DNA from: Macrostomum lignano
Lineage: Eukaryota
DNA: 64,000 nucleotides
NCBI GenBank assembly: GCA_002269645.1
Contig: NIVC01003487.1
Location: forward strand, 31,332 to 95,331
Direction: 5' to 3'
Under the pieces are notes generated by a model. That model was not told the origin of the DNA. It worked only from the letters and a program-made list of their open reading frames with translations, and ran no database searches. Position numbers and translations under genes: made by a program. The number at the start of each line of letters is the position of its first letter. The stretch's first letter is position 1. This document shows, in pieces, positions 23,106 to 64,000 of this stretch.

Positions 23106-24384
23106 TTAGGGTGAGCCAAAAGTTTCCGGAATTTTTAGAATCGAACTTTTAGTTAATTTTTGTCTATGGAAAAGCTTAAAAGCAGCAACCATCTACTATG
23201 CTGTTGGCCAGCCTTATCATCACTCTTTAGCTTAACATTGCTCAGTTTCCCGACCCTGCCTACTTAAGCCAGCAAACGCATCCAATGGAACTGCCAAGAA
23301 CTGAATGGCGAGCATGCAATTCTGCTCAACCACTTTCATGCGGGACGCAACGCAGCAGAGGCACATCGCGAGTTGTTGCAGCTGATGGACCCACATGCAC
23401 CCTCCAAGTCGTCGGTATACGACTGGTTCTCTCGCTTTGCTGAGGAGAACTATGAGCTGAAGGACAAGCCGAGGTCAGGCCGACCCCCTGCTGCTGATGG
23501 CGATGCCGTTCTCCAAGCCCTTGAGGACAATCCGGACTACAGCGTGCGCAAGCTGTCAGCCGCTACTGGGGTGTCCTATGGCACGGTCCGGCGAAGCCTA
23601 TGCAGACAATTAAGGTGCCGAAGAAGCTAACTCTGATGCTCCATGAGCTGACACCCCAGCAGTTGAGAGCCAGGGTGGATGTGGCAACTTCGAATCTTCG
23701 CCAGGCCGGTTCGCCAAACTTTCTCAAGTCGATAATCGCTCAAGACGAGAAGTGGGTCTGCTATGAGAACCCAAGCACATCAGCCGTCTGTGTCGATGCT
23801 TCTGAAGAACTACCCAGCTGCCCAATGCGGAACCCCCACTGCGGCAAGGAGCTGCTCTCTTTCTGGTTCTGCTCGTCTGGCCCTGTTTTCTGGGAGGTCA
23901 TCCCGCATGGCATGGCTGTGAACGCGGAGGTGATCTGCAGCGAACTGGAGCAGGTCGCCCGTTTGCTGCGATCCGTGTGCCCGGGACACTGCGACAAGGT
24001 GCTCCTCTTCGACAATGCGCGGCCTCACAAAGCAAGACTCACCCAGGCCAAGCTGGCAAGCCTGGGCTTCAGTGTTTTGCCCCACCCACCATACTCGCCA
24101 GACCTCTCGCCATGTGACTACCATGTGTTCAGGTCTCTCCAGAGCTTTTGTGATGGACAGCGGTTCGCCAACAAGCAACATGTGGAGCAGGCAGTGCAGA
24201 AATGGATTGATTCAAAGCCTGCGAGCTTCTGGAGGGAGGGGATTGAGGCATTGCCAGCAAGATGGGAGAGGGTCAGGGCCTTGAATGGCAACTACATCAC
24301 ATCGCTGTAAACTGTTTGTTCTTGACACTATATTTGTTATAGTTTTAAAATGTTCAAATTCCGGAAACTTTTGGCTCACCCTAA
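23106..24384 (+). mobile_element. Mariner (DD34D) transposon, 1279 bp
   Basis: TIRs ttagggtgagccaaaagtttccggaattt / aaattccggaaacttttggctcaccctaa; TA TSD on both sides. Confidence 0.95.
23285..24310 (+). pseudogene. Mariner transposase with two frameshifts (~23312 and ~23600-23615)
   Basis: HTH region (SVYDWFSRF...DKPRSGRP); IIAQDEKW, LFDNARPH, YSPDLSPCDYHVF, with 34 residues between D2 and D3. Confidence 0.9.
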
Positions 24385-45009: not shown

Positions 45010-47594
<2,585 letters not shown>

Positions 47595-48834
47595 TTACAT
47601 GTACAGTCTAGTAAACTCTAACACTTATTGTTATCCAATTTTGTTTTACTAGACTTACAATAATCGTTGTTTTCGAGCATTTTATTTGTGCGTTTCGTTG
47701 ACTAAAGTTCTGTAGTTATTGAGACTGTCGTTATTCGGTTGGCAGGATGAAGCCCCGCCATTTTTTGTTTTACTACTCGCGTCTCACTCACGGAAGTTTT
47801 AAACACAGAAACTACAGTTGCTATCTGTTTTAGCATGCTTATTCCTGCACTCAAGATTTATTCGTTGAATTTATGCAGAACTGTTCAAGCTGAAACTGAC
47901 TGCATGGTGAGCGCCACCGTTTTGCGCTCTGCTGGTTTCAAGTATTGCGGCTTTTTTCAATAACCGCTGCCTGCGTTTTCTTAACAACTGCGCCGATCAC
48001 GAATGAGCTGGCAAGCAGACATTTTGAGGCTTCTGCATTTGTTTTTCGGGGGACAGCAGCTCAGTGGGCCCCCGGTCCGCGACCACACTAATCTGGCCTG
48101 GACAATTAGAAAGCTCCGATATGCATCGAAAGTATTAATAATAATTGAAACGCAAGCAAAGGTCAGCTGCTGCAGGTTCAGTGAAGAAATCGCGAAAGCA
48201 GAAGACGAAGCGCCGGCAAAAGTGCAGCCCCCCCCGCTGGGCAGGCCGGGGAGCTGGGAAATGTCAATCGGCATCAGCCCCAGAGCGGCATAAAATATGA
48301 CGGCGGGAGGGCACAGGGACTGCGAACCGTTGGCGAAGGCCGGCGCGGTGAATGAAATCCTGAATTCACCAGCCAGTCCCGCTATTGTTTGAAAATGCTA
48401 ATAAAAGACAAGATGAGTTCTGAATATGTTGATATCCGGATTTTGCGCCGCGGCGCAATGCTGATGGGAAAATTATCCCACTGAAGTTGCTCTGAATTGA
48501 ATGGCGGGGCCACCCGCGGCGGCTCTCCCAGCTGCACTGCAGGGGATTCGATGGGTTGGGGGAAAATATTGAGTGGAGAGGAGGGCGAATGAGTGTAGAG
48601 GCACGCGCGATCCCGGGCAGCCTGGTTGGGATATTTTCTTTTCTGCCCCCCCCCCGCCTGCACCCGTGCGCTGAAGATTTCTGGGATGCACGAAGCTGGC
48701 GATGAAGCTCCATCTCAGTGGCTTCCCCGGAGCTGCAGCCTCCGGAGCGAAACTGCAGCAGCTGAATAAGCCGCATTGGGGAGCGACAGTCCGCGCAGTG
48801 ACAGCGGTGGGAATTAAGGGGGCAGTTGGTTCAC

Positions 48835-49420
48835 TTGAGTGACAGGATCATGGAGTGACAGGATCACAGAGCTTCATAGAGATCACACACAGAGATCTCA
48901 CTGTGATTTTACACAGATCACACACTAACCCAAGTGACAAGATCACAGAGTGACAAGATCACAGTGACAGGATTGTAGAGTGACAGGATCACGGAGTGAC
49001 AACATCAGGGAGTGAGAGGATCACGGAGTGACAACATCAGGGAGTGAGAGGATCACGGAGTGACAACATCAGGGAGTGAGAGGATCACGGAGTGACAGGA
49101 TCACAAAATGACAGGATCACAGAGTGACAGGATTTTAGAGCGACAGGATCACGGAGTGACAGGATCACAGAGTGACAGGATCACAGAGTGACAGGATCAT
49201 AGAGACAAAAAGACAGAGTGACAGGATTGTAGAGTGATATGATCACAGAGTGACAAAATCAGGGAGTGACAAGATAACGGAGTGACAGGATCATGGAGTG
49301 ACAACAATAGGGAGTGACAAGATCACGGAGTGACAGGATCATGGAGTGACAACATCAGGGAGTGACAGGATCACAGAGTGACAGGATCACAGAGTGACAA
49401 AATCAGAGTGACGAGATCAA
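48835..49420. repeat. 16-bp minisatellite (ggagtgacaggatcac)
   Basis: Degenerate period of 16. Confidence 0.9.
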
Positions 49421-49609
49421 AGAGAAAAGTACAGGAGCATGACAAATCTTACACATTTAAATGCTGGTTAACTTGCATAGACTGTTTTAAAATCCCCACG
49501 CTAATCAAAGTAGTGCAATTAAACTTGGGGCAATTTTTTCTGAATTTCGATGATCGGCAAATACAATCTATAATCTGCAATCATTTAGCTACTCAGCTTT
49601 TCTAATGTG

Positions 49610-50445
49610 TGTTCAGGTAATTACCCAGCCTATAATCTGTGGTCAGGTAATTACCCAGCCTATAATCTGTGGTCAGGTAATTACCCAGCCTATAATCTGT
49701 GGTCAGGTATTTATCCAGCCTCTAATCTGTGATCAGGGGATTACCCAGCCTCTAATCTGTGATCAGAGGATTACCCAGCCTCTCTAATCTGTCGTCAGGG
49801 GATTACCCAGCCTCTAATCTGTGGTCAGGTGATTACCCAGCCTCTCTAATCTGTGGTCAGGTAATTATCCAGCCTCTCTAATCTGTGGTCAGGTAATTAT
49901 CCAGCCTCTCTAATCTGTGGTCAGGTAATTACCTGGCCTCTAATCTGTGGTCAGGGGATTACCCAGCCCCTAATAAGTGGTCAGGTAATTATCCAGCCTC
50001 TCTAATCTGTGGTCAGGTAATTACCTGGCCTCTAATCTGTGGTCAGGGGATTACCCAGCCCCTAATAAGTGGTCAGGGGATTACCCAGCCTCTCTAATCT
50101 GTGGTCAGGTAATTACCTGGCCTCTAATCTGTGGTCAGGGGATTACCCAGCCCCTAATAAGTGGTCAGGGGATTACCCAGCCTCTCTAATCTGTGGTCAG
50201 GTAATTACCTGGCCTCTAATCTGTGGTCAGGGGATTACCCAGCCTCTCTAATCTGTGGTCAAGGGGATTATCCAGCCTCTCTAATCTGTTGTCAGGTAAT
50301 TACCCGGCCTCTAATCTGTGGTCAGGGGATTACCCAGCCTATCTAATCTGTGGTCAGGTAATTATCCAGCCTCTCTAATCGGTCGTCAGGTAATTATCCA
50401 GCCTCTCTAATCTGGTCAGGTAATTATCCAGCCTCTCTAATCTAT
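49610..50445. repeat. 30/32-bp minisatellite (taatctgtggtcaggtaattacccagcctc)
   Basis: Direct. Confidence 0.93.
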
Positions 50446-50893
50446 GATCCATTCTTCACCTCGTGTGAGCCAAGGGTAAGACTGAGCACTAACATGGCTT
50501 TTTAATTTTGTTTTGTCTCAGGGTCCCCTACCTAACTATGTATAAGCTAGGATACCGGACAATATATCAATTGTAGCATTAACTAAATTGGCATTACGAG
50601 CGTAGTTATTAGTTATACTATAGTGCTTCTGCTTCGGACTAGAATGCGGATGTATGGTTGAAATTCTTGGACTCAGAGAGAATTTATGAAATTTCAAGGT
50701 TCATTGGGAGAATTACTGCAATTCTGTGGCTCATTGGGTTGCTCAGATGCTTTGAGCCATAGCTCATAGGGGATCTGATTGATATCTTAAATAAGAAACA
50801 AACAATGGTGACTGTATACAAGGGGAAAATCTACGGGGGGGGGCACAGATTGCTAGAATTTTACGATTTTATTTTTCCGTTTTTTGGCACTAC

Positions 50894-53800
50894 AATGCCG
50901 CCAAGCACCGCCTGCTGGGCACCGTAGCCAACCAGCCCAGGAGACTCAGCCGGATCAGCGGACCCCGGCAGGACTCAGAGCTGTGCAGCCTGGCCGCAGC
51001 GCACCCGCACCTGTCCTGCGAGTCTCTGGCTCGAGCCTGGTCCGTGCCGGCGTCCAGGCACACCGTCAGGCGGCGGCTCATCTCGGCGGGCTTCCGCAGT
51101 CGGGCGGATCGGTGCAACTCCGCGCCTGCCGGAGGCGCCAAGTTCAGGGCCTGGTGCGCGGCGCGTCTGAAGTGGGCTCGGCTACGGCTGCACTGGGGAC
51201 CGGAGCACTGGGCCAGGTGAGACTCTGAGCTGGTCAGCTCTGATTGCACTGAGCACAGGTGAGACTCTGAGCTGGTCAGCTCTGATTGCACTGAGCACAG
51301 GTGAGACTCTGAGCTGGTCAGCTCTGATTGCACTGAGCACAGGTGAGACTCTAAGCTAGTCAGCTCTGATTGCACTGAGCACAGGTGAGACTCTGAGCTG
51401 GTCAGCTCTGATTGCACTGGGCCAGGTGAGACTCTGAGCTGGTCAGCTCTGATTGCACTGAGCACAGGTGAGACTCTGAGCTGGTCAGCTCTGATTGCAC
51501 TGAGCACAGGTGAGACTCTAAGCTGGTCAGCTCTGATTGCACTGAGCACAGGTGAGACTCTGAGCTGGTCAGCTCTGATTGCACTGGGCCAGGTGAGACT
51601 CTGAGCTGGTCAGCTCTAATTGACATTGCAGAATTCTGTTCACGGACGAGACCTGCTTCAAGCTAACCGACTTTACCTGCCGAGGTCGTCAGTGGCGAAT
51701 GAAAAATCTGAGTAGGAAAAAATCATCGAGAGTGGCGGAAGAGCGCAGGAATCCGGAGGCAGAGGCGTCGGGCCATGGGCAGCCAGGTGAGCAACGCCTC
51801 ACAAGGTAAGCAAAGTGACATTGATGGCTTGTGCGTGCAGTTTAGCCATAGAAATCCGGATACAGCAGCCTAAAAGCTACTGCAAGGGGGCGCCAAAGCT
51901 ACTTTAAGGGGGCGCCAAAGCTACAAGGGGGCGCCAAAGCTGCTGCAATGGGCGCCAAAGCTGCTGCAATGGGCGCCAAAGCTGCTGCAATGGGCGGCAA
52001 TTGGCAAAGCTACTGCAATGGGCGCCAAAGCTACTTCAAGGGGGCGCCGAAGATACTGCAATGGGCGCTAAAGCTACTGCAATGGGCGCCAAAGCTGCTG
52101 CAATGGGTGCCAAAACTACTGCAATGGGCGCCAAAGCTGCTGCAATGGGCGCCAAAGCTACTGCAATGGGCGCCAAAGCTACTTCAAGGGGGCGCCAAAG
52201 CTACTCCAAAGGGGGCGCCAAAGCTACTGCAATGGGCGGCAAAGCTGCTGCAATGGGCGCCAAAGCTGCTGCAAATGGGCGGCAATCGGCAAAGCTACTG
52301 CAATGGGCGCCAAAGCTGCTGCAATGGGCGCCAAAGCTACTGCAATGGGCGCCAAAGCTACTTCAAGGGGGCGCCAAAGCTACTCCAAAGGGGGCGCCAA
52401 AGCAACTGCAATGGGCGCCAAAGCTGCTGCAATGGGCGCCAAAGCTGCTGCAAATGGGCGGCAATCGGCAAACAACAACAACAAAATACGCTGTCATGAT
52501 GGTAAAAGTCTGCGTCACAGGGCGCGCTTCATGGCTTGGGCGCGAACAAAGGCCGCGCCACCGGCAGTGTCCGGGGCGCCGGCGTCAGCCAGCAGACAGT
52601 CGACATAACGCCGAGTTCGCGCTTGACCTCGCCGGTAGGGTGCCTGCAGCGTGAGCAGCAGCACCTCCTGCACCGGCTGTGGGCAGTACGACTCGGCGCG
52701 GATGAGATGGCCTGCGAGCTGGAGTCGCCGACGGCGCAGTAGATCACTTGGACGTGGCAGGCCAGCGCGGCGATAGAGTGCCGCGTTGGTGACTCGCTCG
52801 ACGCCGATGTTGAAGGCGGCGCGCAGCAGACCAGCGTGCGCCGCATCGACTTGCTGTTCGAGTGAGTCCGTCAGCGTCCAGGTCTCGGCGTTGTACAGCA
52901 GGACGGTCTCGATTACCGCCTGGAACAGCGCCGCCCTCTGGCGGTCCGGTAGGGCCTCGGACTGCAGGACTGCCCTCACAGAACGAAAGGCAGCCCAGGC
53001 AAGCCCGCGGCGGCGTCGCAGGTCCTCGCGAGCGTCTGGAACCAGACCGCCGAGGTAGACGAACTGCTGACATCGCGGGAGTTCGGTCGCCTGCCCGTCA
53101 GCGCCTCGGCAAAATATTGCAGCCTCGATGTCGTCCGGCACGCAGAGCACAACGGTCTTCTGCGTGTTGACCACCAGGCCGACACTCGCCGCAACGGCAA
53201 CCAGCCTGTCCAGCTGCCGTTGGGCGCCCTCGACGGTCGAGGACAGCAGGGCGAGGTCGTCGGCGTAGCCAAGCACGCTGAGCCGCTTCTCCGGTTGACG
53301 TCGACCCACGCGTCGCTGCAGCAGAAAACCGTCGTCGTCGGTAGGAAGAGCAGTCCGCAGCACCCAGTCAAGCACCAGGACGAACAGAAACGGCGCCAGC
53401 GTATCTCCCTGAAGCACTCCGGAGGATGTCTCAAAGGAGTCCGATAGGCCGTCCGGTGTTGTCACAGCAGCTGTCGTATCACGGTACATCGCCATGACGG
53501 CGGAGATCAGCTGCTCAGGCACGTTGTACGCGCGGAGCACCATTGGAAGCACGGCTCTGACAACCGAGTCGAATGCCTTCTTGAAATCAATAAAGATTAA
53601 AATCAGTATCGACTGACGAATCCGCGCCTCCTCGATGACTCGGCGAAGAGCCAGGATCTGCGCCACTGTGCCGCGATGGGGCCGGAACCCGTTCTGCTCT
53701 GGGCGCAGGTACGGATCCAGCACGGGCTGCAACCGCGAAAGCAGCATCCGGTTGAACAGCTTCGCTGCACAGGACTGAAGGCAGATGCCTCGATGGTCTT

Positions 53801-56479
53801 CAAGCCTAGTGGTGCCCGGCTTCTTTGGAACAGCGACGATGTGCGCCGTGGTCCATTCGTTGGGCGCCGCCTCACCGAAGAGCACGCGGTTCATCACTCT
53901 GGCGACCTCAGCGGCCACACAGGGGATGCGCAGCGCCTCGATGGGCACCTCGTCCGGACCCAGCGCTTTCCCGCCCGGTGACTGCTGGGCGAGCTTGACA
54001 ACGTCGGCTGCGTTGACTGGGGCTACGCTGAAACTCTCCTCTGCCGGCAGCGGCGTCTCCGGCGGCAGCGTCAGACTGTCTGGCAGCGGGGGTGGCGGCG
54101 CGTTGACGATGGCGGCGAAGAACTCGCGCGTCTTCCGGCGCTCGTCCGGCGTGTCACCAGCCAGGTTCAGCGGATTGCGCCGCTTTCGTCCCGTCAGAGC
54201 GTTGATGGCGGACCAGGCCACGCGCCCTCTGGCATCGGGCCCAGCGGCAGAGACAGCCTGAATGGCGTCATCGACAGCCGCTTGTTGGCGCTGCAGGTAG
54301 ACAGCTGCCAGAGCTGCCTCTGCCTCGCGGGTTGGTCGCCTGCTCAAGCGGAGCTTCTCCAGATCTTCCCTCGCTGCCTGAATCGCGGGTCGTCCTGCCA
54401 GACCGGCTGCCCACGTTGAGCCGGCTGCATCATCGGGACTGCTTGCTCCGCGGCGGTTCTGACTGCAGCGCACACTTCCGCATACTCGGCACTTCCACGC
54501 TTGTCGCCCAGCGCGGTGTTAAAGGCGCTAGCAAAGCGACGCTGCGTATCGGTGGCTCTGAGCGCGCGGTAGTAGCGCCGCGGTGGCCGCTTCGGCGGAC
54601 GGTAGAGCGGATCGCGAAGGTTGAGGTCGCAGATGAGGAGCCGGTGATCGGACCGCAGAGCCAGCGGCGTGATGGTGCGGCAGTTGACGGCGCGACGACG
54701 CTCACGGAAACGCACGAGCACGTGGTCGAGCTGTGCTTGTCTCCGGGTTGCGTTCCTGCCACGCGCGTTCCGCCGCCTCCGCTTGCAGCCCACGAAGGTT
54801 GCGAGACCGCTCAGTGGCTTGCGGAAGCGGGTGTTGGCCGACACCATGTCCTGCCTCTCCAGGAAGTCCTCCAGTGCCTCGGTGTTGTTGTTCCCGCGTG
54901 GCGTCACGAACAGCGACCTCTCGGACCTACGCAGGACTGCGTTCAGGTCTCCGAGGGCGACCGCTGTGTCACGCTGCGCCGTCGCCTCTACCTGCACTGA
55001 GAGCTGCTCGAAAAACTCTTGAGCCTCGTCAGGGCGTGTGGCAGGGGGCGCGTACGCGCAGAACAGGCGAGCATTCCGACCGCGTAGCCGGACGTCGATC
55101 CGAAGCAACCGGGGGACAGGGAGACGCAGCGACAGCTCTGCTGCAGCCTCGGCCCGATCAGCGCTCCAACTCCTCCACGGCCTCGCTGGTCCGCAGAAGT
55201 ATAGTAGAGGGTCCACCCGGCGCCCAAGTCCTCACAATGAAGTCCCGGGTCGGCCTTGATAGACACCTCCTGCAGCGAGATGATGTCGCAGCTCAGGTCG
55301 TACGCCAGCTTCGCCAGCACCCCTCTACGCCAAGCAGCCTTGAGAGTGCGGCAGTTCAGCGTCCCGACCCGAAGCATGCCCTGTGGTACGGCTGGGGCTC
55401 GATGCAGTTGAGCCTCACGGTCCCCGGCGCCACCCGGAGGATCCGAGTGGACCCGCGCGGCAGCTCGACGGGCGGCGCCACGCAGCCGGCCTCGTCGGTT
55501 CCGCTCACGCCGGCGCTCAACACGCCGACGGGCGCTCCGCTGCCCTCGCTTGGTCCTGCCGCATTTGGCCGCCGCAGCAGTTAAGCGCGGCTCTCCGCTC
55601 TGACCACGAGGAGGTAGCGGCATTTATCATGCAATAAATTGAGTCTTCGCAGTAAGAGATGCCCACGCAGTAAGAGATCCCAAGCTACTGCAATGGGCGC
55701 CAAAGCTACTCCAAGGGGGCGCCAAAGCTATTTCTAGGGGGCGCCAAAGCTACTCCAAGGGGGCACCAAAGCTACTTATAGGGGGCGCCAAAGCTACCGC
55801 AAGGGGGTGCATATGTTTTTGCAAAAATGATTAGGGGAGGGGGCCGCGGCCCCCTTGCCCCCCCCCCCCAACCCAACTGCATGCTGACCGAGGGCCGATT
55901 TGCGAGGGCCCAACTTGTATGCTGCCACATTTCAGAAGCAGGTCACGAGCTCCGGGCGTACAGCAAGAGCAGCCGCAGTGGCGCCAGTTCCCCTCGGTGT
56001 GGCTCTGGGCTGGCATCCACTTGACCGGCCAGAGCGAGGCCGTCTTCCCGGACAGCCTGACCGGCCCGGCTTACGCCCGCCTGCTGGAGGCGGTGGTGGC
56101 GCCCTACTGCCAGCGCCACCTGCCTGAGAGCTGCCAGCTCATGGACGACAACGCGCCGCACCATCGGACGGTGCTGGTCACCGAGGCCAAGCGGCGGCTC
56201 GAACTCGCGACCGTCCAAGACTGGCCGGCCCGGTCGCCCGACCTGAACCCGATTGAGAACGCTTGGGCGCTGCTCAAAAGCCGAGTGCGGCAAAGGCGGG
56301 ACGAACTACGGCTGGGGCAGGGCGACCGCCCCGGTGAGGATTCGGCAAGGCTCAAACAAATCATCAAAGAGGAGTGGCGGCGAATGGGTGGGGAAGGCGT
56401 GGCGGCGAGACTGGTGGGGAGCATGCCGAGGCGATGCCAAATGGTTGTGGACAACAACGGAGGTCGAATTAAGTATTGA
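50894..56479 (+). CDS. Intron-containing Tc1/IS630-type transposase-derived gene (DD35E); exons ~50894/50906-51216, 51632-51805, 55936-56479; start unresolved
   Basis: HTH_Tc3-like SRHTVRRRLISAGFRSR...RLKWARLRLHW, then ILFTDETCF (D1), SVWLWAGI, MDDNAPHH (D2), WPARSPDLNPIENAW (E; 35 residues after D2). Both introns are GT-AG, phase 2, and the frame is preserved. Confidence 0.85.
51205..51620. repeat. 42-bp tandem array spanning the exon/intron boundary (about 10 copies of cag|gtgaga)
   Basis: Unit caggtgagactctgagctggtcagctctgattgcactgagca; contains the hairpin gagctg-gt-cagctc. Confidence 0.93.
51880..52468. repeat. 21-bp satellite (gcgccaaagctactgcaatgg), continuing at 55680-55805 on the far side of the LINE
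   Basis: The same unit lies on both sides of the LINE insertion. Confidence 0.93.
52515..55623 (-). pseudogene. RTE EN-RT ORF with two 1-nt frameshifts in C-runs (~55112 and ~54388); likely start MLRVGTLN at 55377
   Basis: Adding one C at each run gives VSLSPRLLRIDV and QDDPAIQAARED, and one open frame of ~1036 codons from 55623. Confidence 0.85.
55557..55622 (-). ncRNA. HDV-like ribozyme core (P2, P3/L3, P1 3' strand, P1.1, P4, J4/2); P1 5' strand absent
   Basis: Minus strand: TGCCGCT-ACC-TCCTCGT-GGT-CAGAGC-GG-AGA-GCCGCG..TGCGGC-GGCCAA-A(T)GCGGCA. Manual fold only. Confidence 0.55.
55628..55659 (-). other. Spliced-leader-like sequence TCTCTTACTGCGAAGACTCAATTTATTGCATG at the LINE 5' end
   Basis: Matches the Macrostomum lignano SL as I recall it (not database-verified); ends in ATG, as flatworm SLs do. 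Confidence 0.75.
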
Positions 56480-56920
56480 CTGGGGATCACCATGGGATCT
56501 GGGATCAGCATGAGATCTGGGATCTGGGATCAGCACGAGATCTGGGATCTGGGATCAGCACGAGAGCTGGGATCTGAGATTTGGCATCAGCATGGGATCT
56601 GGGATCATAATGGGATCTGGGATCAGCATGGGATTTGGGATCTGGGATCAGCATGGGATTTGGGATCAGCTTGGAATCTGGGATCTGTATGGGATGGGAT
56701 CAGCATGAGATCTAGGATCTGGGATCAGCATGGTATATGGGATCAGCATGGGATCCGGGATCTGGGATCAGCATGGGATCCAGGATCTGGGATCAGCATG
56801 GGATCCAGGATCTGGGATCAGCATGAGACCCAGGATCTGGGATCAGCATGGTATATGGGATCAGCATGGGATCCGGGATCTGGGATCAGCATGGGATTTG
56901 GGATCTGGGATCAGCATGAG
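56480..56920. repeat. gatctgggatcagcatgg-type minisatellite starting right after the Tc1-gene stop
   Basis: Direct, with variable unit length. Confidence 0.9.
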
Positions 56921-57064
56921 TATATTCTACGGGAATATACGGTATAAGCGTGTTTATTTTGTATTTGCGACTCTGCAAAGTTTTTGGATTTTACCCAGCT
57001 GCACATGTATTCATTTTTTATTTAAAATGTCTTAAATTGCTATCCGAATAGAAAATTAGACAGC

Positions 57065-57375
57065 AATTTAACTTTCCGAGATACTTGTTTGTCCAAAGAC
57101 GCAAATTTAACTTTCCGAGATACTTGTTTGTCCAAAGACGCAAATTTAACTTTCCGAGATACTTGTTTGTCCAAAGACGCAAATTTAACTTTCCGAGATA
57201 CTTGTTTGTCCAAAGACGCAAATTTAACTTTCCGAGATACTTGTTTGTCCAAAGACGCAAATTTAACTTTCCGAGATACTTGTTTGTCCAAAGACGCAAA
57301 TTTAACTTTCCGAGATACTTGTTTGTCCAAAGACGCAAATTTAACTTTCCGAGATACTTGTTTGTCCAAAGACGC
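57065..57375. repeat. 39-bp near-perfect tandem repeat, ~8 copies
   Basis: 13-aa periodic translation NLRLWTNKYLGKL. Confidence 0.96.
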
Positions 57376-57559
57376 ACAATTTTTACTTTTTCATATTTTA
57401 TTCATCATAATCCAATTTTAGCATGCTGATGGTACAAAAACGTGTTATAGTATTATTTTTATTGTTAATTTTTTATTTGAAAAAATAAAAACGCGAATCA
57501 CGCTACTGAATTTGTCGAACCAAGTAGTGTGCAATGCGAAATTATTTAATATTAGAATT

Positions 57560-58135
57560 TTACTGGGCAAAATACTTGGCCGCAGCCGCGTCCATTACAC
57601 TGGCCAAGCGGACGTCCCGACTGGATATGCCGCCGCAGGAGTGCGTGGTCAGGGTGACGTCAACTCGGTTGTAGACGTTGAACCACTCGGGGTGGTGGTC
57701 AAGCTTCTCAGCGTTTAGAGCCGAGTGGGTCATGAAGGAAAATGCCTGCAATTGGGAGAAAATATCAGCTGATTTCATCAAGTCAAATCTCACCCAGAAT
57801 TATATTCAGCTAGAAAGAGTCCCCATACCTGCTGAAAATCCTTGAACTTGTAACTTTTGGAGATGGCATCCCGGCCATCAACCAGTTTCCAGTTGCACTG
57901 CAGCAGTGGGTTCAGCAGCTCCTGCCTCTGCTCTGGGCTCAGCGTGGAAGGGCCCTATGGTTGAAGATAATATAACATAAAAAGCTAGACACTAAATAAA
58001 AAGCAAACATACTAACAAATATACCCTCTTAGATTTTGTTGGTGAAGAAGCATCCATGCTAAATAGTCTGTATCCAATACACTGCCACAGTCTGCAAGGA
58101 AGTACAAGGCCACAGCTTGCATACAAATGTTGCAT
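57560..58135 (-). CDS. PCBD: Pterin-4-alpha-carbinolamine dehydratase (PCBD/DCoH), ~140 aa; exons 58135-58025, 57954-57829, 57745-57560
   Basis: [10 protein letters not shown]...[21 protein letters not shown]|AFSFMT...[24 protein letters not shown]; all introns are phase-0 GT-AG. Confidence 0.95.
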
Positions 58136-58828
58136 TAAGATAGTTTTTCACTAGTAAATGGCATGCATGAGAGTGATGAAACAATGTAATTAAATTTAAA
58201 GATAGAGTCATATTTAGGACTGTCTTAATGAAATATAAAAAAAAACTGAAAATAGCCTAAATTTTTACAAGAAACAAATATTTCTTGAAAAGAACTAGTT
58301 TTTTGCCACTTGATTAGTCTTGTTTTTGTTATTTTATTAGCCCTATTTATTTCCTAAATGACTTAAAGGTAAAGACATGACTATAAATGTAATTTAAAAA
58401 TAAAAATAACTTAGGTTATCAATCTAATTATGTTATCATTTAGAGGAAAATTATATTAAAAATATTGCAAAAGTACTGCAATGATGGCTTTACTATGGAG
58501 TACGGAGAAAATATAGGGACTAGTTAAAAATTCATGAAAAAAGGAATTAAGGTACAAATAATATTAATAATAAGCAAACAAATACAATGACAAAGTCTAG
58601 CATGGTTTTAGTTTTTGTTTACTGTCCTTTTTATGCTTTTTTGAGAATTTGAAGTTTACTGAAAAATCCTTGGACAGTGGGAAAATTTAACGCCATTCCA
58701 ATTGGTTTAAAAAACTTCAAGTTCTACTGGTAATCTGGTGCTGTTTTTTGAATCTAAGACGAACTGACAAGATAACAGACGAAACGAGTGCCCCCCGGCG
58801 ACAGCAGGACCCCTCAGCCAAGAAAAAA

Positions 58829-61800
58829 ATGGGAAACAACGGTAAAATCAGAAGTTCTAGCTGTTCTTTCACGAGTATAGTATAAAAATTGAAATCAATA
58901 CATTCATCTACATGTGTGCAACGTGCATGCATCGGTACCTTTGTTTTAAACGTTCTTGGAAAACATGGTTTTAAAATTTGTGTGTTTGTTAAAGATTTCG
59001 TGGCCGTCAAGTTATAACGCAGATTTTTATGTTATTAATAACAATCATTTTTATCAATCAAAAGTACGAACACAAAACGAGATAAACGTACTTGTTTTTT
59101 AGAAACTTTACATTTGCATAGCATTTAGGCACTTTTGAGTTTTGTTGATTTTGTATCCAAGTCATTCAAATGATTTGCAAGAACTTTTTTTTAAGCATTT
59201 CTCTAGTCAGTAAAGAGTAGTACATTTAATTAGATTTTATTTTTCGTTTGTTCATAAACTGCTACGTGTTAGGCATACCAGTTTCTTAAAACAGAAAATA
59301 AGAAGCCTTTAGAGGCGGAGCCACAACCAATGTCTACTTGCGCACGCTTTGAAGTGGAAGTACAAGCAGCTGACGCTAGTTCTGCTTACACGGCCGTCGG
59401 ATTAATTATCGGTCTCATCATCGGCTTCCTCCTGACTTTTATTTTACTATGGATCTGCTGTTTTCATATGAAGGTACGCTTTATGATCCTTTAATAGCTA
59501 CTAGAAATTTGAAGCATAAAGATATATGAAGCTGTCATTGTCAGTTGTCACTTTGCCCTGTGGCGAGTTGCAAGCTTTATTTAATAAAAGGCTTAATTTG
59601 TTAAGCATGATTTAAATTTAATTTTCTAAAATCTGTAATGTCAAAACTTAATTTTTAATGTATAACTTGATAAAATTTTGAAGTTTAAAGTTACAAAAAT
59701 ACTCCTGCGAAAGTTATTCGAAATGTAATCTTTAATTTTAGAAGGCTTGAATATTCTTGTGTACCATTAAAGCTTTAATTTGGTATTTATTAATCCAATA
59801 TTTGCTCTACTCTCACCCAGTTTCGCAGTCGCTCCTACAACACATGCTTCTTGGCCAAGCTCTATTCGGCTGGCGCAGAGCGCTCCTGCGGCGCTGTGAG
59901 TCATTTGACCTGCAGTTATGCGAAATCCTTTGTTTATCAATAGCAAATAAAGAACTATACGAGCATAAATTCTTGTTTGCAGAAATTCAACGATAAGATG
60001 ACCTGCTTGGATAGAAGAAACCTGGGAAGAGTGGAAGAAGCCGATCCGGTAAGAACTTTATTATGACAGCGCACAATTGCATAAGTTATTTGGTAAAACT
60101 ATCGGAAAAGAGACCAGCTAGAGCATTTTACAAAAGTACATGTAATTGCAATAGAAAAAAATGAACAGCAGATTTAACTTCCGTTGCTTCCTGCACGCGT
60201 TAAATGTAAAGACACGAACTGATTTTAAAACTGAACTTTTTCAGTTTAAAACTGAACGCTGAGAAGGCCAAGGGTGGCCTGCAGCAAATGCGGCTCCAAT
60301 ACGCCGTCTCTTGGAGGGAGGGAGGGCGCCCCTGTCTCTTGGAGGGCGCCCCTGTCTATTGGAGGGCGCCCCATGTCTCTTGGAGAGCGCCCCTGTCACT
60401 TGGAGAGCGCCCCTGTCTCTCGGAGGGCGCCCCTGTCTCTCGCGCCCCCTGTATCTTAGCGGGTGCCCCCTGTATCTTAGCGGGCGCCCCCTGTATCTTA
60501 GCGGGCGCCCCCTGTATCTTAGCGGGCGCCCGTCTTTTTTGTGGTCGCTCTAGTCTCTGGGTAGGCGCGCCCTAATTGTGCCCATACCGTGTCTCCTACA
60601 TGTAGGTCGGTGGATGCCACATCCAAGAGATAGCAAAATTGAGCTCCTGTCATTCGTTAACTTTTGTGGAGCAGCATATTTGTGGGGGCAATTATGCCCC
60701 CTCCCCTTCAGCTTACAACCCTGAGCTGCAAAAATCCAGTTGAGCATTCTGAACGGTTTTGAATAATGTTACAATTTAAGCAGTCCGTGTGTCGACAAGC
60801 TGTTAACAATTTATTTTAGAAAAATAGCATATTGTTTATTAAAATACAAACTGGCAGAATATTGTAAATCAGCCGTCCAAACTCGGAAGATAAGATAACG
60901 GTGCAGTCTCGCCAATTGGCATGATAGGTCAATGCCAAATTGGCGCTGCAAGGGGCATTTGTTGAAAGCCTTCCACACACAATACTTTAAAGCACATTAA
61001 AGTGCCTAAAATAGTTTAATAAGAGACATAAGAATAAGAATGTTAGAAGTCCTACTTATAAAATATAAAGGTATTTTAACAGTGATTTGAATTTGTTATA
61101 ATAGTGTTCCTTTTTGGCACCGATTTGATTACCATTCAGTTTAATAAATGACTAAAGCGGTGGAGTATTTTTGTTCAGTTTTGGCTCAGCTGACAGTCTC
61201 AGAAATCGCTAAACTTGAGTCGGCTTGAAATGTCTAAGGCAGGGGCCGGCAAAATTTTTACATCCAGGGCCAGATAAACAATCCAGCCCATGACTGCGGG
61301 CCTGCTAAGAGTGGAAAAGAGAGGGGATGGGGAGAGAGAAAAACGAGGAGATGAGAGATGGCAGAAGAGAGGAGAGGTGAGTGTCGAGATGAGAGCCTAT
61401 GAGAGAAGAAATGAGTGAGAAGAAAGGAGATAAGATGAGAGGAGAGAGAAGGGGAGAGGAGAAGGAGAAAAGAGAGAAGAGGAGAGAGAAGATAGGACAG
61501 TAGATGATAGGAGATGAGAGGAGAGCAGGAGAGGAGAGAGGAGATGAGAGTAGATATGAGAGGAGAGAGGAGATGAGAGGAGATAGAAAATAAGAGGAGA
61601 TATGAGAGGAGAGAGGAGATAAGAGGAGATAGAAAATAAGAGGAGATAGGAGAGGAGAGAGGAGATGAGAAGAGATAGGAGAGGAGAGAGGAGATGAGAG
61701 GAGATAGAAAATAAGAGGAGATATGAGAGGAGAGAGGAGATAAGAGGAGATAGAAAATAAGAGGAGATAGGAGAGGAGAGAGGAGATGAGAAGAGATAGG

Positions 61801-63407
61801 AGAGGAGAGAGGAGATGAGAGGGGATGGAAAATGAGAGGAGATAGGAGAGGAGAGAGGAGAGAGGAGATGAGAGGAGATAGGAGAGGAGAGGAGAGAGGA
61901 GAGAGGAGATGAGAGGAGATAGGAGAGGAGAGGAGAGAGGAGAGAGGAGATGAGAGGAGAGGAGATCAGGAGAGGAGATATCTAAGAAGAGACAATCCTT
62001 GAGCGGGCCGGATCGCCAGTCTAAAGGGTCCAAGGACCCGATTGCCGGATAGAGAGACTTTGCGGGCCGGAGTTTGCCCACCCCTGGTCTAAGGAATTCG
62101 AGAATTTGTGCCGCCACCCGATTCAGAGCCTCCGCCGGCGTCGGCAACATCCGGCAGTTCCCTGCGAATGCGCTCCATGCGGAACAGCCAATCGGAGGCT
62201 CGCAACAGCCGGAGGTCGCTGGTTCCCCCGACGGCGGAAGTCGGATCTGGCAAGGCGGGGGAGGACGGCGTCCTGGGCCGGCTGTGGCTGCTGCAGGCTG
62301 ATGGTCAACAGGCGGCCGAGCGGCTGGCGATGATTGACGCGATTGCGCAGGTTACAGAGTGAGTCCGGGATGGGCTGGTGCTGGGCAGTGAAGCAGAATC
62401 CACATGGTTGGCGTACGGAATGCTGCAGGCTTCAGAATATCACGGAGAATTCAACAGTCTGTGTCCAACACAACTGTAATATCAGGGTGTCCGCCATGAG
62501 ATACTCAAGGTTTCCAGCATCACATTGTGGGGCCAGCGATTTGACCGGGTGTTCAATGTTAGATTTGGGTGTCCATTATAGTACATGCATGTATTTGAGT
62601 TTCAATTCAAAAGAATTGGGGTGTCAGGTATAAGATTGGGGTGTCCGGTTTAAGATGGGGTGTCCGCTATAAGATTGGGGTGTCCGGTTTAAGATTGGGG
62701 TGTCCGGTATAAGATTGGGGTGTCCGGTACAAGATTGGAGTGTCCGGTATAAGATTGGGGTGTCCGGTATTAGATTGGGGTGTCCGGTATTAGTTGGGGT
62801 GTCCGGTATAAGATTGGGGTGTCCGTATAAGATTGGGGTGTCCGGTATTAGGTTGGGGTGTCCGGTATTAGGTTGGGGTGTCCGGTATTAGGTTGGGGTG
62901 TCCGGTATTAGGTTGGGGCCCAGCCAAGCCAGTTTGGCACCGCAACACCACACCGCAGGCAGGAGGGGGAGCAGGAGCTGCTGCAGCAGGACTGGGCCGC
63001 CACGGCCCGCCAAGAACGGGACCTCTGGCGCGCCCGCTTGCTGGCTTGTGGCAGCTGACCGGGTCGCTGCTGAACGCCTGCAAGCCGACGGTGACATCGA
63101 CGAGGACACTCGGCGGAGGCTGCTGGCCGAGCACACGGACCAGATGGCCGGCGCCCAGGCCAGGGTTGAGGAGGAGCTCGCCGCGGCCCGGGAGGAGCGC
63201 AAGAAGCGTCAACTGTCTCGGAGCTCGTCGACCGATGCCACGGTGGTTGCGGCGGAGGAGGCAGAGGCGGCGTCGGAGGAGGAGGCGAAGCGGTCCGCCC
63301 GGCTGGACTCAGCGGCGCAGCTGGAGATGGCGCGGCTTCGGCGCCGGCTGTCTGGCCTGCCGAAGCTCGGCGCCGAGAAAGCGGACGCTCTGATGGCCGG
63401 CCTGAAG
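58829..63407 (+). CDS. Putative single-pass TM protein with downstream coiled-coil exons; exons 58829-58841, 59295-59473, 59983-60048, then tentatively ~62130-62351 and ~62920-63407; runs off the window
   Basis: The first three exons splice in frame (MGNNENKK...VGLIIGLIIGFLLTFILLWICCF...). Later GC-rich E/A/R-rich ORFs end at GT donors, but their linkage and phase are unresolved and one frameshift is apparent near 63040. Confidence 0.45.
60305..60535. repeat. 20/21-bp minisatellites (agggcgcccctgtctcttgg; gcgggcgccccctgtatctta)
   Basis: Direct. Confidence 0.85.
61240..62086 (+). mobile_element. 847-bp hAT-type MITE with an internal GA microsatellite
   Basis: Imperfect TIRs CAGGGGCCGGCAAA / TTTGCCCACCCCTG; 8-bp TSD GTCTAAGG (61232-61239 and 62087-62094). 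Confidence 0.88.
62625..62915. repeat. 20-bp minisatellite (gtccggtataagattggggt)
   Basis: Period of 20. Confidence 0.92.
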
Positions 63408-63529
63408 GTGAGGAGCTGGAAGGGCGATGCTTTGATGACGTTTCAAATGTCTGAACACTTCTCTGGTGGCCATGACTTACAGGCTGGAACTTATAGCTGT
63501 ACAGGCTATTGGCTGGAGGTTGACTGCCC

Positions 63530-64000
63530 CGAGATTGCAGTTACAGGCTACAGGTTATAGGTTACAGGCTGCAGGTTATAGGTTGCAGCCTACAGGTTAT
63601 AGGTTACAGGCTGCAGGTTATAGGTTGCAGCCTACAGGTTATAGGTTATCTCGTAGGCTACAGGTTATAGGCCACAGCCTACAGACTAGAGGTTACAGAT
63701 GCAGGGCTACAGACTATGGGTTACATGCTACAGACTATAGGTTACAGGCTACAGACTATAGGTTACATGCTACAGACTATAGGTTACAGGCTACAGACTA
63801 TAGGTTACAGGCTACAGACTGTGGGTTTACAGGTTACAGACTATAGGTTACAGGCTACAGACTATGGGTTACAGGTTACAGACTATAGTTACAGGCTACA
63901 GACTATGGGTTACAGGCTACAGACTATAGGTTACAGGCTACAGACTATGGGTTACAGGCTACAGACTACAGGTTACATGCTACAGACTATAGGTTACAGG
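63530..64000. repeat. ~21-bp minisatellite (ggttacaggctacagactata)
   Basis: Direct; runs to the window end. Confidence 0.9.

What the first reader, a model, noticed from the sequence alone, without database searches (positions are those of the whole stretch)
50894..56479. Three-exon Tc1-type DD35E transposase gene without TIRs: candidate domesticated transposase
Seen: the HTH region, D1, D2 and E are split over three exons with frame-preserving phase-2 introns. The introns have accumulated satellites and a 3.2-kb LINE while the ORF stayed free of stops. Codon usage is GC3-rich like neighbouring host genes, and I found no TIRs or TA TSD. Spacing is DD35E rather than the canonical DD34E, with a ~40-aa low-complexity insert after D1. 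No in-frame ATG precedes exon 1; an SL-derived AUG spliced at aag|CAC (50906) would be in frame. Inference: a host-retained transposase gene.
Basis: partly seen in the sequence, partly recalled or inferred. Interest (0 to 1): 0.75.

Follow-up and report, generated by a model that had tools for sequence, protein, structure and literature searches.

The report
Disabled copy of host-kept transposase gene
This stretch of the flatworm Macrostomum lignano genome holds a three-exon gene descended from a Tc1-type "jumping gene" enzyme that can no longer jump. Selection has kept the gene intact in sister copies of the locus, but the copy in this window has lost its start through a 507-bp deletion and is probably dead.

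Summary
Window 50894-51216, 51632-51805 and 55936-56479 splice through canonical GT..AG sites into a stop-free Tc1-type transposase ORF. It has D, D and E with 35-residue spacing and no terminal inverted repeats. A 3.2-kb LINE and satellites sit in its introns.

The window is M. lignano scaffold NIVC01003487.1. I retrieved three homeologous loci through the neighbouring host gene PCBD. Two of them carry the same three-exon gene complete, with 385 codons and their own ATG.

Across the four syntenic copies dN/dS is 0.17-0.35 (LRT p 4e-6 to 4e-3). Variable sites fall 9/9/26 by codon position, and exons have no small indels while introns vary 4- to 9-fold in length. An older paralogous locus (PCBD dS 0.32-0.44) keeps only a shattered exon-3 relic.

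The window copy itself is damaged. A 507-bp microhomology deletion removed the upstream region, the ATG and codons 1-37 (most of the first HTH). The LINE is private to this copy, and its terminal branch has dN/dS of about 0.5. The spliced-leader AUG idea is unnecessary. Expression is untested.

The parts
50886..50889 (.). Junction of a 507-bp deletion private to this copy, with 3-nt microhomology GCA. It removed 396 bp of upstream sequence, the ATG and codons 1-37.
   Evidence: Alignment with L001 (minus strand 15662-15095): left flank ...TTTTTTGGCA|GCCGCC, right flank ...GCCGCGCA|CTACAAT. L004 and L005 also carry the missing segment.
50890..51216 (+). Exon 1 remnant (codons ~39-147 of the 385-codon gene): end of HTH1 helix 3, a degenerate GRPR-like linker, and the second HTH (HTH_Tnp_Tc3_2).
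   Evidence: It is 99% identical in protein to L001 exon 1.
51217..51631 (+). Intron 1 (phase 2, GTGAG...TTGCAG). It is a 42-bp x 10 minisatellite whose unit is the last 12 nt of exon 1 plus the first 30 nt of the intron. The ancestral intron was about 39 nt.
   Evidence: (TRF, 96% matches). Lengths in the homeologs are 122, 574 and 412 nt. Removing it restores the canonical W..W..(I/V)LFTDE spacing.
51632..51805 (+). Exon 2: first catalytic Asp (FTDE, D at 51645-51647) and the start of a lineage-specific low-complexity insert.
   Evidence: The same 174-nt exon is present in all four copies.
51806..55935 (+). Intron 2 (phase 2, GTAAG...TTTCAG), 4130 nt here. In the homeologs it is 2126, 762 and 471 nt.
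   Evidence: The acceptor and the satellite are also present in the older paralog L002.
51873..52472 (.). 21-bp satellite inside intron 2, left part.
52473..55659 (-). 3.2-kb LINE (APE + RT in one ORF broken by at least 2 frameshifts, (TTG)n 3' tail). It is present only in this copy.
   Evidence: Pfam RVT_1 at 3e-28, weak Exo_endo_phos. ORF frames. It matches only L003, which is the window itself, among the seven loci.
55628..55659 (-). 32 of the 35 nt of the M. lignano spliced leader, fused to the 5' end of the LINE.
   Evidence: Exact match, 0 expected by chance. SL sequence from PMC8629364. It is followed by LINE sequence, not by the SL-RNA intron.
55682..55807 (.). 22-bp satellite inside intron 2, right part.
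55936..56479 (+). Exon 3: second Asp (D at 56147-56149), Glu (56255-56257), a 9-residue insert after E, the conserved C-terminus ...GGRIKY, and stop TGA at 56477-56479.
56483..56925 (.). 18/25-bp satellite that starts 4 nt after the stop codon. No 3' TIR.
   Evidence: The same satellite follows the gene in L001 and L004 and follows the relic in L002.
57560..58135 (-). Host gene PCBD (pterin-4a-carbinolamine dehydratase, BOX15_Mlig013913g1), convergent with the transposase gene. It is the synteny anchor.
   Evidence: PF01329. dN/dS is 0.04-0.08 between homeologs.

Best explanation
The window (M. lignano Mlig_3_7 scaffold NIVC01003487.1) carries one of four homeologous copies of a stationary three-exon gene derived from a Tc1-type (IS630/Tc1/mariner) transposase. 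The gene lies tail-to-tail with the host gene PCBD.

Shown:
- In two homeologs (NIVC01001063.1, NIVC01001465.1) the gene is complete: its own ATG and 385 codons. These encode a bipartite paired-like HTH region and an RNase-H-type catalytic domain with all three acidic residues (D152, D276, E312; 35-residue spacing).
- None of the copies has terminal inverted repeats, so the gene cannot move itself.
- The reading frame has been under purifying selection in place since the copies diverged.
- It also stayed open across an older duplication after which the other paralog decayed.

Inferred: the gene is transcribed from its own upstream region (a TATAAAT about 95 nt 5' of the ATG in the intact copies). 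Two phase-2 GT-AG introns are then spliced out. The protein serves the host as a sequence-specific DNA-binding protein that still has a functional DDE nuclease/strand-transfer site. Most probably it acts on leftover ends of its parent transposon family, either repressing or cutting them.

The copy in this window is a damaged homeolog. A 507-bp microhomology-mediated deletion took away the upstream region, the start codon and codons 1-37 (most of the first HTH). A spliced-leader-capped LINE then landed in intron 2. Its private branch shows a raised dN/dS (about 0.5, against about 0.25 on the rest of the tree). It is most likely a non-functional duplicate being lost after polyploidisation.
For: Identity and synteny:
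- Window 47560-64000 is 100% identical to L003.
- L001, L004 and L005 share PCBD, the flanks, both intron positions and the satellites.

ORF state:
- L004 and L005 have a complete 385-codon ORF.
- L001 has a 25-bp tandem duplication that shifts the frame 28 codons before the stop.
- The window has the 507-bp deletion.

Selection:
- NG86 dN/dS is 0.19-0.35 for all divergent pairs, for example window vs L001: 22 synonymous against 16 non-synonymous changes, p 1.7e-5.
- ML GY94 gives omega 0.17-0.33, with LRT against omega=1 at p 4e-6 to 4e-3.
- The 44 variable sites fall 9/9/26 by codon position.
- Shifted sense frames give omega 1-2.2. The one antisense frame that shares third positions has 4-7 stops.
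- Third-position divergence (about 7%) equals that of unique noncoding DNA (7.3-7.8%). From the indel rate in noncoding DNA, 5.6-8.5 indels are expected in the exons and none is seen.
- Replacements avoid conserved positions: 2 of 96 family-conserved positions, against 5 of 51 insert positions.

Long-term retention:
- PCBD dS between the two locus groups is 0.32-0.44.
- The older paralogs keep only an exon-3 relic with frameshifts, a 116-nt deletion that removes D2, a 109-nt deletion and no exons 1-2. They still share the intron-2 satellite and acceptor.

Other:
- No TIRs.
- All family-invariant catalytic residues are retained.
- Window-branch changes are 9 synonymous to 14 non-synonymous, against 12 to 9 elsewhere.
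Against: - There is no transcript evidence. No Mlig_3_7 GenBank protein model covers any copy. This is weak evidence, because that annotation excluded transcripts overlapping repeats (PMC5730564).
- Selection was measured only among homeologs of one neopolyploid genome, on 44 variable sites.
- Two of the four copies are damaged and the older paralog lost the gene, so it is at least partly dispensable.
- The HTH regions score below Pfam thresholds even in the intact copy.
- L001 and L004 differ at 2 of 1158 coding sites but at 3.2% of noncoding sites. This hints at gene conversion, which could blur branch counts.
- Genome-wide copy number and orthologues in other Macrostomum species could not be examined.
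- The raised omega on the window branch is not significantly different from either 0.25 or 1.
Confidence: 0.68

Rival explanations
1. All copies are neutral relics of a Tc1-like transposon that lost its ends not long ago. The open frame is luck, and the low dN/dS is an artefact of gene conversion among homeologs or of mutation bias at GC-rich third positions.
For: Two of four copies already carry disabling lesions. The older paralog is fully decayed. There is no expression evidence. L001 and L004 look homogenised in the exons. The region is dense in transposons and satellites.
Against: The omega values are frame-specific and hold in an ML model with kappa and F3x4 codon frequencies. Third positions diverge at the noncoding rate while first and second positions diverge at about a quarter of it. 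Only 7 of 26 third-position changes are in CpG context. No small indels occur in 1041-1158 nt of exon, against 5.6-8.5 expected for the window pairs. The frame stayed open over a period in which PCBD accumulated dS 0.32-0.44 and the sister paralog was shattered.
Confidence: 0.15
2. One reading: the window copy is itself functional. It would be trans-spliced at aag|CAC (50905/50906), so that the AUG at the end of the spliced leader starts an N-terminally shortened protein.
For: The M. lignano SL ends in ATG (PMC8629364). CAC at 50906 is in frame. A T-rich tract lies 20-45 nt upstream. The remaining 348 codons are still open.
Against: The missing start has a simple cause: a 507-bp deletion of sequence that the three homeologs retain, including their own ATG and upstream region. 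GCCAAG does not fit the trans-splice acceptor motif [T/C]TNCAG. The deletion cuts through helix 3 of the first HTH, not at a domain boundary. This branch has the highest dN/dS. A LINE has also entered intron 2 in this copy only.
Confidence: 0.07
3. It is still a mobile autonomous element, or part of a larger mobile unit, whose ends I failed to recognise.
For: Tc1 and Tc3 transposase genes are known to contain short introns (my own knowledge), so introns alone do not prove immobility. Satellites next to the stop codon could hide a diverged 3' end.
Against: Sensitive inverted-repeat searches between the 1.1-kb 5' flank and the 1.2-kb 3' flank of the intact copy L004 found only AT-rich chance matches. 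All seven loci hold the sequence at the same position next to PCBD. There is no second copy in the 64-kb window. Only one close protein relative exists among about 15 billion, and that is a gene model of the same locus.
Confidence: 0.04

Closest known systems
Drosophila CG14478, a Tc1/mariner-derived host gene that keeps the DDE domain (PMC13548663)
   Same: Stationary, without TIRs or TSDs, in conserved microsynteny, under purifying selection, with a canonical DDE fold and triad retained.
   Different: CG14478 keeps only the catalytic module, is conserved across many species with dN/dS 0.107, and is shown to be expressed. The flatworm gene keeps both the HTH region and the DDE domain. Its dN/dS is 0.17-0.35, measured only among homeologs of one genome, and it has no expression data.
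SETMAR (Hsmar1 mariner transposase fused to a SET domain; cited in PMC13548663)
   Same: A transposase of the same superfamily, immobilised and kept by the host with DNA-binding activity.
   Different: SETMAR is a fusion with a methyltransferase and its third catalytic residue is altered (my own knowledge). The gene here stands alone with an intact D, D, E.
Autonomous Tc1-family transposases such as Sleeping Beauty (catalytic domain 5CR4) and the Tcb2-like proteins of Trichonephila
   Same: Same domain order and same invariant residues. The protein ends at the same C-terminal ...GG.T.Y. Identity is 29-35%; the match to 5CR4 has E 5e-11.
   Different: One extra residue between D2 and E. About 35 extra residues after D1 and 9 after E. 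Weak HTH profile scores. Two spliceosomal introns. No TIRs. Fixed position next to PCBD.
DD35E/Traveler family of Tc1/mariner (name from my own knowledge; no paper read here)
   Same: 35-residue spacing between the second D and the E.
   Different: Phylogenetic placement was not tested. Of the 120 nearest relatives, 104 are DD34E and only 6 are DD35E. The spacing therefore looks like a single-residue insertion in a Tc1-type lineage.
Decaying TIR-less Tc1/mariner pseudogenes (PMC13548663, section 10)
   Same: The window copy (5' deletion) and the relics in L002, L006 and L007 look like this class.
   Different: Those pseudogenes lack conserved synteny and constraint. The intact homeologs here have both.

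Membership tests
IS630/Tc1/mariner transposase (protein homology) | RNase-H-like DDE_3 catalytic domain with a D, D, E/D triad | tested here: met
   Pfam DDE_3 at E 5.5e-12 for the window copy and 3.6e-13 for the intact copy. D113/D237/E273 fall in invariant columns of an 18-sequence alignment. Sleeping Beauty 5CR4 matches at E 5e-11.
IS630/Tc1/mariner transposase (protein homology) | N-terminal bipartite (paired-like) HTH DNA-binding region | tested here: inconclusive
   In the window copy the first HTH is deleted up to helix 3. The intact homeologs align over both HTHs, but their Pfam scores are below the cut-offs: HTH_Tnp_Tc3_2 at 27.2 against 31.5, and the HTH1 models at 17-22 bits.
Tc1/mariner transposon (mobile element) | Terminal inverted repeats flanking the transposase gene | tested here: not met
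   No flanking inverted repeats in the window, in L001 or in L004 with word size 7.
Tc1/mariner transposon (mobile element) | TA target-site duplication at the element ends | not testable with these tools
   Without recognisable ends there is no place to look. Satellites abut the stop codon.
Tc1/mariner transposon (mobile element) | Multiple dispersed copies | tested here: inconclusive
   All seven copies found are syntenic next to PCBD. No other copy lies in the window. The only close protein among about 15 billion is a model of the same locus. No M. lignano whole-genome search was possible.
DD34E (Tc1 sensu stricto) | 34 residues between the second D and the E | tested here: not met
   35 residues in all four copies. 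104 of the 120 nearest relatives have 34.
DD35E/Traveler | 35-residue spacing plus monophyly with Traveler elements | tested here: inconclusive
   The spacing is met. Monophyly was not tested. Identity to DD35E relatives (P0008 33%, P0014 32%) is no higher than to DD34E ones (34-35%).
Domesticated transposase gene (criteria of PMC13548663) | Loss of TIRs and TSDs | tested here: met
Domesticated transposase gene (criteria of PMC13548663) | Conserved microsynteny of orthologous or homeologous copies | tested here: met
   Four homeologs and three older paralogs all lie next to PCBD and share the satellites and intron 2. This is within one species only.
Domesticated transposase gene (criteria of PMC13548663) | Purifying selection on the reading frame (dN/dS below 1) | tested here: met
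   Omega is 0.17-0.35, with LRT p 4e-6 to 4e-3, and is frame-specific.
Domesticated transposase gene (criteria of PMC13548663) | Orthologues in other species | not testable with these tools
   No other Macrostomum genome was reachable. No non-lignano close hit was found.
Domesticated transposase gene (criteria of PMC13548663) | Detectable, correctly spliced expression | not testable with these tools
   No RNA data were available. The GenBank annotation filtered out repeat-overlapping transcripts. The UniProt model P0001 is an ab initio chimera.

The most novel reading that the evidence does not exclude
A full-length Tc1-type transposase, with both HTH motifs and an intact DDE site, has been kept as a stationary, intron-bearing host gene in a flatworm. 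It would still be catalytically active, serving as a host nuclease or recombinase on dispersed relic ends. It might contribute to the unusually indel- and tandem-repeat-rich, karyotypically unstable M. lignano genome. As far as the held literature shows, this would be the first such gene described in Platyhelminthes, and one of very few Tc1/mariner domestications that retain the whole enzyme.
Probability: 0.15. Interest if true: 0.7.

Novelty: new member of a known kind. Interest (0 to 1): 0.5.

Why it matters
Tc1/mariner domestications are described as rare, and most keep only one module of the enzyme (PMC13548663). This case has a complete enzyme, a clear neutral control (the decayed older paralog) and a natural series of alleles: two intact, one frameshifted and one 5'-deleted. 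It sits in a laboratory flatworm where RNAi and transgenesis work, so the function is directly testable. It also shows that a TIR-less transposase ORF in a repeat-rich genome can be told from debris by using polyploid homeologs as the comparison set. For the window itself, the practical message is that this copy should be annotated as a truncated homeolog, not as an intact gene.

Tried and rejected
(1) I first read the single close database hit, P0001, as a possible dispersed copy. Its exons map colinearly to the window, including an 'exon' antisense to PCBD. It is an ab initio chimera of a syntenic locus. A look-up of its DNA failed.

(2) From P0001's protein alone, in-frame and out-of-frame replacement rates looked equal (4/161 against 4/134, my count). 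At that stage I leaned towards a neutral relic. This was overturned once real DNA of the homeologs was retrieved through PCBD.

(3) I looked for an alternative splice that would remove the 35-residue insert (donor CTGA|GTAGG). It is phase-incompatible with every nearby acceptor in the transposase frame (inspection).

(4) I searched for the missing N-terminus elsewhere in the window by tblastn with word size 2. Nothing was found.

(5) TIR searches in the window, L001 and L004 gave only chance AT-rich matches.

(6) An Rfam scan of the window gave no hits.

(7) A target-site duplication for the LINE could not be resolved inside the satellite.

(9) GC3 as evidence of host ownership was rejected, because the LINE has the same GC3.
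Full report
**1. The observation**

Joining window 50894-51216, 51632-51805 and 55936-56479 gives one stop-free frame of 346 codons ending at TGA 56477-56479.
- Both gaps are phase 2 with canonical sites, CCAG|GTGAGA...TTGCAG|A and CAAG|GTAAGC...TTTCAG|A. These fit the M. lignano consensus GT[G/A]AG and CAG (PMC8629364).
- Pfam finds DDE_3 (E 5.5e-12) and a sub-threshold HTH_Tnp_Tc3_2.
- In an alignment with 17 relatives, every family-invariant catalytic residue is present. These include FTDE (D at 51645-47), DDNAPHH (D at 56147-49) and NPIE (E at 56255-57).
- The protein ends exactly where the relatives end.
- It has one extra residue between D2 and E (DD35E), about 35 extra residues after D1 and 9 after E.
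- Intron 1 is a 42-bp x 10 array whose unit contains the last 12 nt of exon 1.
- Intron 2 holds a 21/22-bp satellite split by a minus-strand 3.2-kb LINE.
- No inverted repeats flank the gene and no second copy lies in the window.
- No in-frame ATG precedes exon 1.

So the description is accurate. The GC3 argument is not informative, because the LINE has the same GC3.

**2. Where the window comes from**

The only close protein among about 15 billion was P0001, a UniProt M. lignano model.
- Its pieces map colinearly to the window. One 'exon' is antisense to the last exon of a real host gene on the minus strand at 57560-58135. That gene is PCBD, pterin-4a-carbinolamine dehydratase. P0001 is therefore an ab initio chimera of a syntenic locus.
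- A search with PCBD found two groups of M. lignano proteins, at 99% and 94% identity. Through them I fetched seven Mlig_3_7 loci.
- L003 (NIVC01003487.1) is 100% identical to window 47560-64000, so the window is that scaffold.
- L001, L004 and L005 are homeologs. M. lignano DV1 has three subgenomes (PMC10733133).
- L002, L006 and L007 are an older paralogous locus.

**3. The gene in the homeologs**

- L004 and L005 carry the same three exons (440, 174 and 544 nt) with the same splice sites and a complete 385-codon ORF. It starts MPPQLSTEQRQQLVGMRMAGASYRQIASRLGISLGAAHY|NAAKH....
- L001 is the same except for a 25-bp tandem duplication in exon 3, which shifts the frame 28 codons before the stop.
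- The window lacks 507 bp that all three retain. The junction shows 3-nt microhomology (GCA). The lost segment comprises 396 bp upstream of the ATG, including a TATAAAT about 95 nt 5' of it, plus codons 1-37. That is most of the first HTH.
- This explains the missing ATG. The break lies inside helix 3, not at a domain or exon boundary.
- The LINE is present only in the window copy.
- Intron lengths differ greatly: intron 1 is 122, 415, 574 and 412 nt, and intron 2 is 2126, 4131, 762 and 471 nt. The exons have no length differences other than the two lesions.
- No TIRs are found around the complete copies either.

**4. Selection**

- Nei-Gojobori dN/dS is 0.19-0.35 for all divergent pairs. For the window against L001 there are 22 synonymous and 16 non-synonymous differences, with dS 0.090, dN 0.021 and binomial p 1.7e-5.
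- A pairwise GY94/F3x4 likelihood model gives omega 0.17-0.33 and rejects omega=1 with p 4e-6 to 4e-3.
- The 44 variable sites fall 9/9/26 by codon position.
- The signal is specific to the transposase frame. Shifted sense frames give omega 1.0-2.2. The one antisense frame that shares third positions carries 4-7 stops.
- It is constraint, not third-position hypermutability. Unique noncoding DNA differs by 7.3-7.8% between the window and the others, which matches the third positions (about 7%). Only 7 of 26 third-position changes are in CpG context.
- From the indel rate in noncoding DNA, 5.6-8.5 indels are expected in the exons of the window pairs. None is seen.
- Replacements avoid family-conserved positions (2 of 96) and favour the lineage-specific inserts (5 of 51).
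- PCBD gives the same dS (0.108) with omega 0.04-0.08.

**5. Long-term retention**

- Between the two locus groups PCBD has dS 0.32-0.44.
- The older paralogs keep the intron-2 satellite, the exon-3 acceptor and the downstream satellite, so the insertion and intron 2 predate that duplication.
- Their exon 3, however, has 1-, 2- and 4-nt indels, a 116-nt deletion that removes D2, and a 109-nt deletion. Its 3' end is replaced by satellite. Exons 1-2 are undetectable.
- This is what neutrality does over that time. The open 1158-nt frame in L004 and L005 is therefore hard to explain without host-level selection.

**6. The window copy**

On the unrooted tree ((W, L005), (L001, L004)), the window's private branch carries 23 changes: 9 synonymous and 14 non-synonymous, for omega of about 0.5. 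The rest of the tree carries 12 and 9, for omega of about 0.25. The difference is not significant. Together with the loss of the upstream region, the ATG and HTH1, and with the private LINE, the simplest reading is a duplicate that has stopped functioning after polyploidisation. GCCAAG is also a poor match to the trans-splice acceptor motif.

**7. How it probably works**

Shown: an immobile, selectively maintained ORF encoding HTH-HTH-DDE.

Inferred: the gene is transcribed from its own upstream region, and splicing of both introns is obligatory because intron 1 has an in-frame TGA after 3 codons. The protein would bind DNA and retain a metal-dependent nuclease/strand-transfer site. Because it has no ends of its own, any activity must be in trans, most plausibly on relic ends of the parent family. 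The weak HTH profile scores suggest the binding specificity has drifted from canonical Tc1 enzymes. I put about 0.68 on 'host-maintained gene, window copy disabled'. I put much less (about 0.15) on a retained catalytic role in genome dynamics.

**8. Comparison and novelty**

- By homology it belongs to the Tc1 branch of IS630/Tc1/mariner. Of the 120 nearest relatives, 104 are DD34E. The closest solved structure is the Sleeping Beauty catalytic domain 5CR4.
- As a mobile element it fails the TIR test.
- Against the published domestication criteria (PMC13548663) it meets loss of TIRs, microsynteny and dN/dS below 1. Orthologues in other species and expression remain untested.
- The absence of a GenBank model is uninformative, because repeat-overlapping transcripts were filtered out (PMC5730564).
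- Compared with CG14478 or SETMAR it keeps the whole enzyme and stands alone.
- A literature search found no description of it.
- I rate it a new member of a known kind.

**9. Limits**

- There were no RNA data, no whole-genome copy count and no other Macrostomum genomes.
- Selection rests on 44 sites within one neopolyploid genome, with a hint of gene conversion between L001 and L004.

Noticed in passing
window 52473-55659 (-), 5' end at 55628-55659: The LINE in intron 2 begins with 32 of the 35 nt of the M. lignano spliced leader, joined directly to LINE sequence rather than to the SL-RNA intron. It is therefore a cDNA copy of a trans-spliced LINE transcript. A 12-nt partial SL duplicate (TCTCTTACTGCG) lies 6 nt further 5'. 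The insertion is absent from all three homeologs, so it is young, yet its ORF already has at least 2 frameshifts. One literature search found SL-tagged retrogenes in dinoflagellates but no flatworm LINE case.
   Followed up: partly
window 51205-51622; L001 14799-14670; L004 13716-13135: The intron-1 minisatellite is a tandem duplication of the exon-1/intron-1 junction itself. Each 42-bp unit starts with a GTGAG donor and ends in CAG. Copy number runs from 3 to about 14 among the homeologs. Every extra donor would bring an in-frame TGA, so the first donor must be paired with the last acceptor.
   Followed up: partly
window 14660-16942 (-) and 17074-18705 (-): There is a 760-aa ATG-initiated ORF with a hAT dimerisation domain (E 4e-8). 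Next to it lies a 543-aa ORF without any Pfam hit. Both are AT-rich (GC3 0.29-0.34), unlike the GC3-rich Tc1-like gene and LINE. No clear TIRs were found in a quick scan.
   Followed up: partly
window 23600-24310 (+): A 236-aa ORF matches mariner-type Transposase_1 and DDE_3. It belongs to a different family from the gene studied and is probably a fragment.
   Followed up: no
whole window: The window has an extreme density of minisatellites: 67 TRF rows at score 200 or above, roughly one array per 1-2 kb, with unit sizes of 4-125 bp. Arrays abut coding exons on both sides without entering them.
   Followed up: no
L001 vs L004 (NIVC01001405.1 vs NIVC01001063.1): The two copies differ at only 2 of 1158 coding sites but at 3.2% of unique noncoding sites, and their intron lengths differ 3- to 5-fold. 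This suggests gene conversion limited to the exons, or very strong constraint.
   Followed up: no
window 57581-57631 and 62138-62356; UniProt model P0001 (A0A1I8...): The public M. lignano protein model for this locus is an ab initio chimera. It joins frameshifted transposase exons, an 'exon' antisense to PCBD, and a further downstream piece. Its many homopolymer indels look like assembly errors of the older ML2 assembly.
   Followed up: yes
L005 13908 upstream (about -310): Upstream homology among the three ATG-bearing copies stops about 310 nt before the ATG in L005. Beyond that point L005 has unrelated AT-rich sequence. The last 100 nt before the ATG are almost invariant (1 difference).
   Followed up: no
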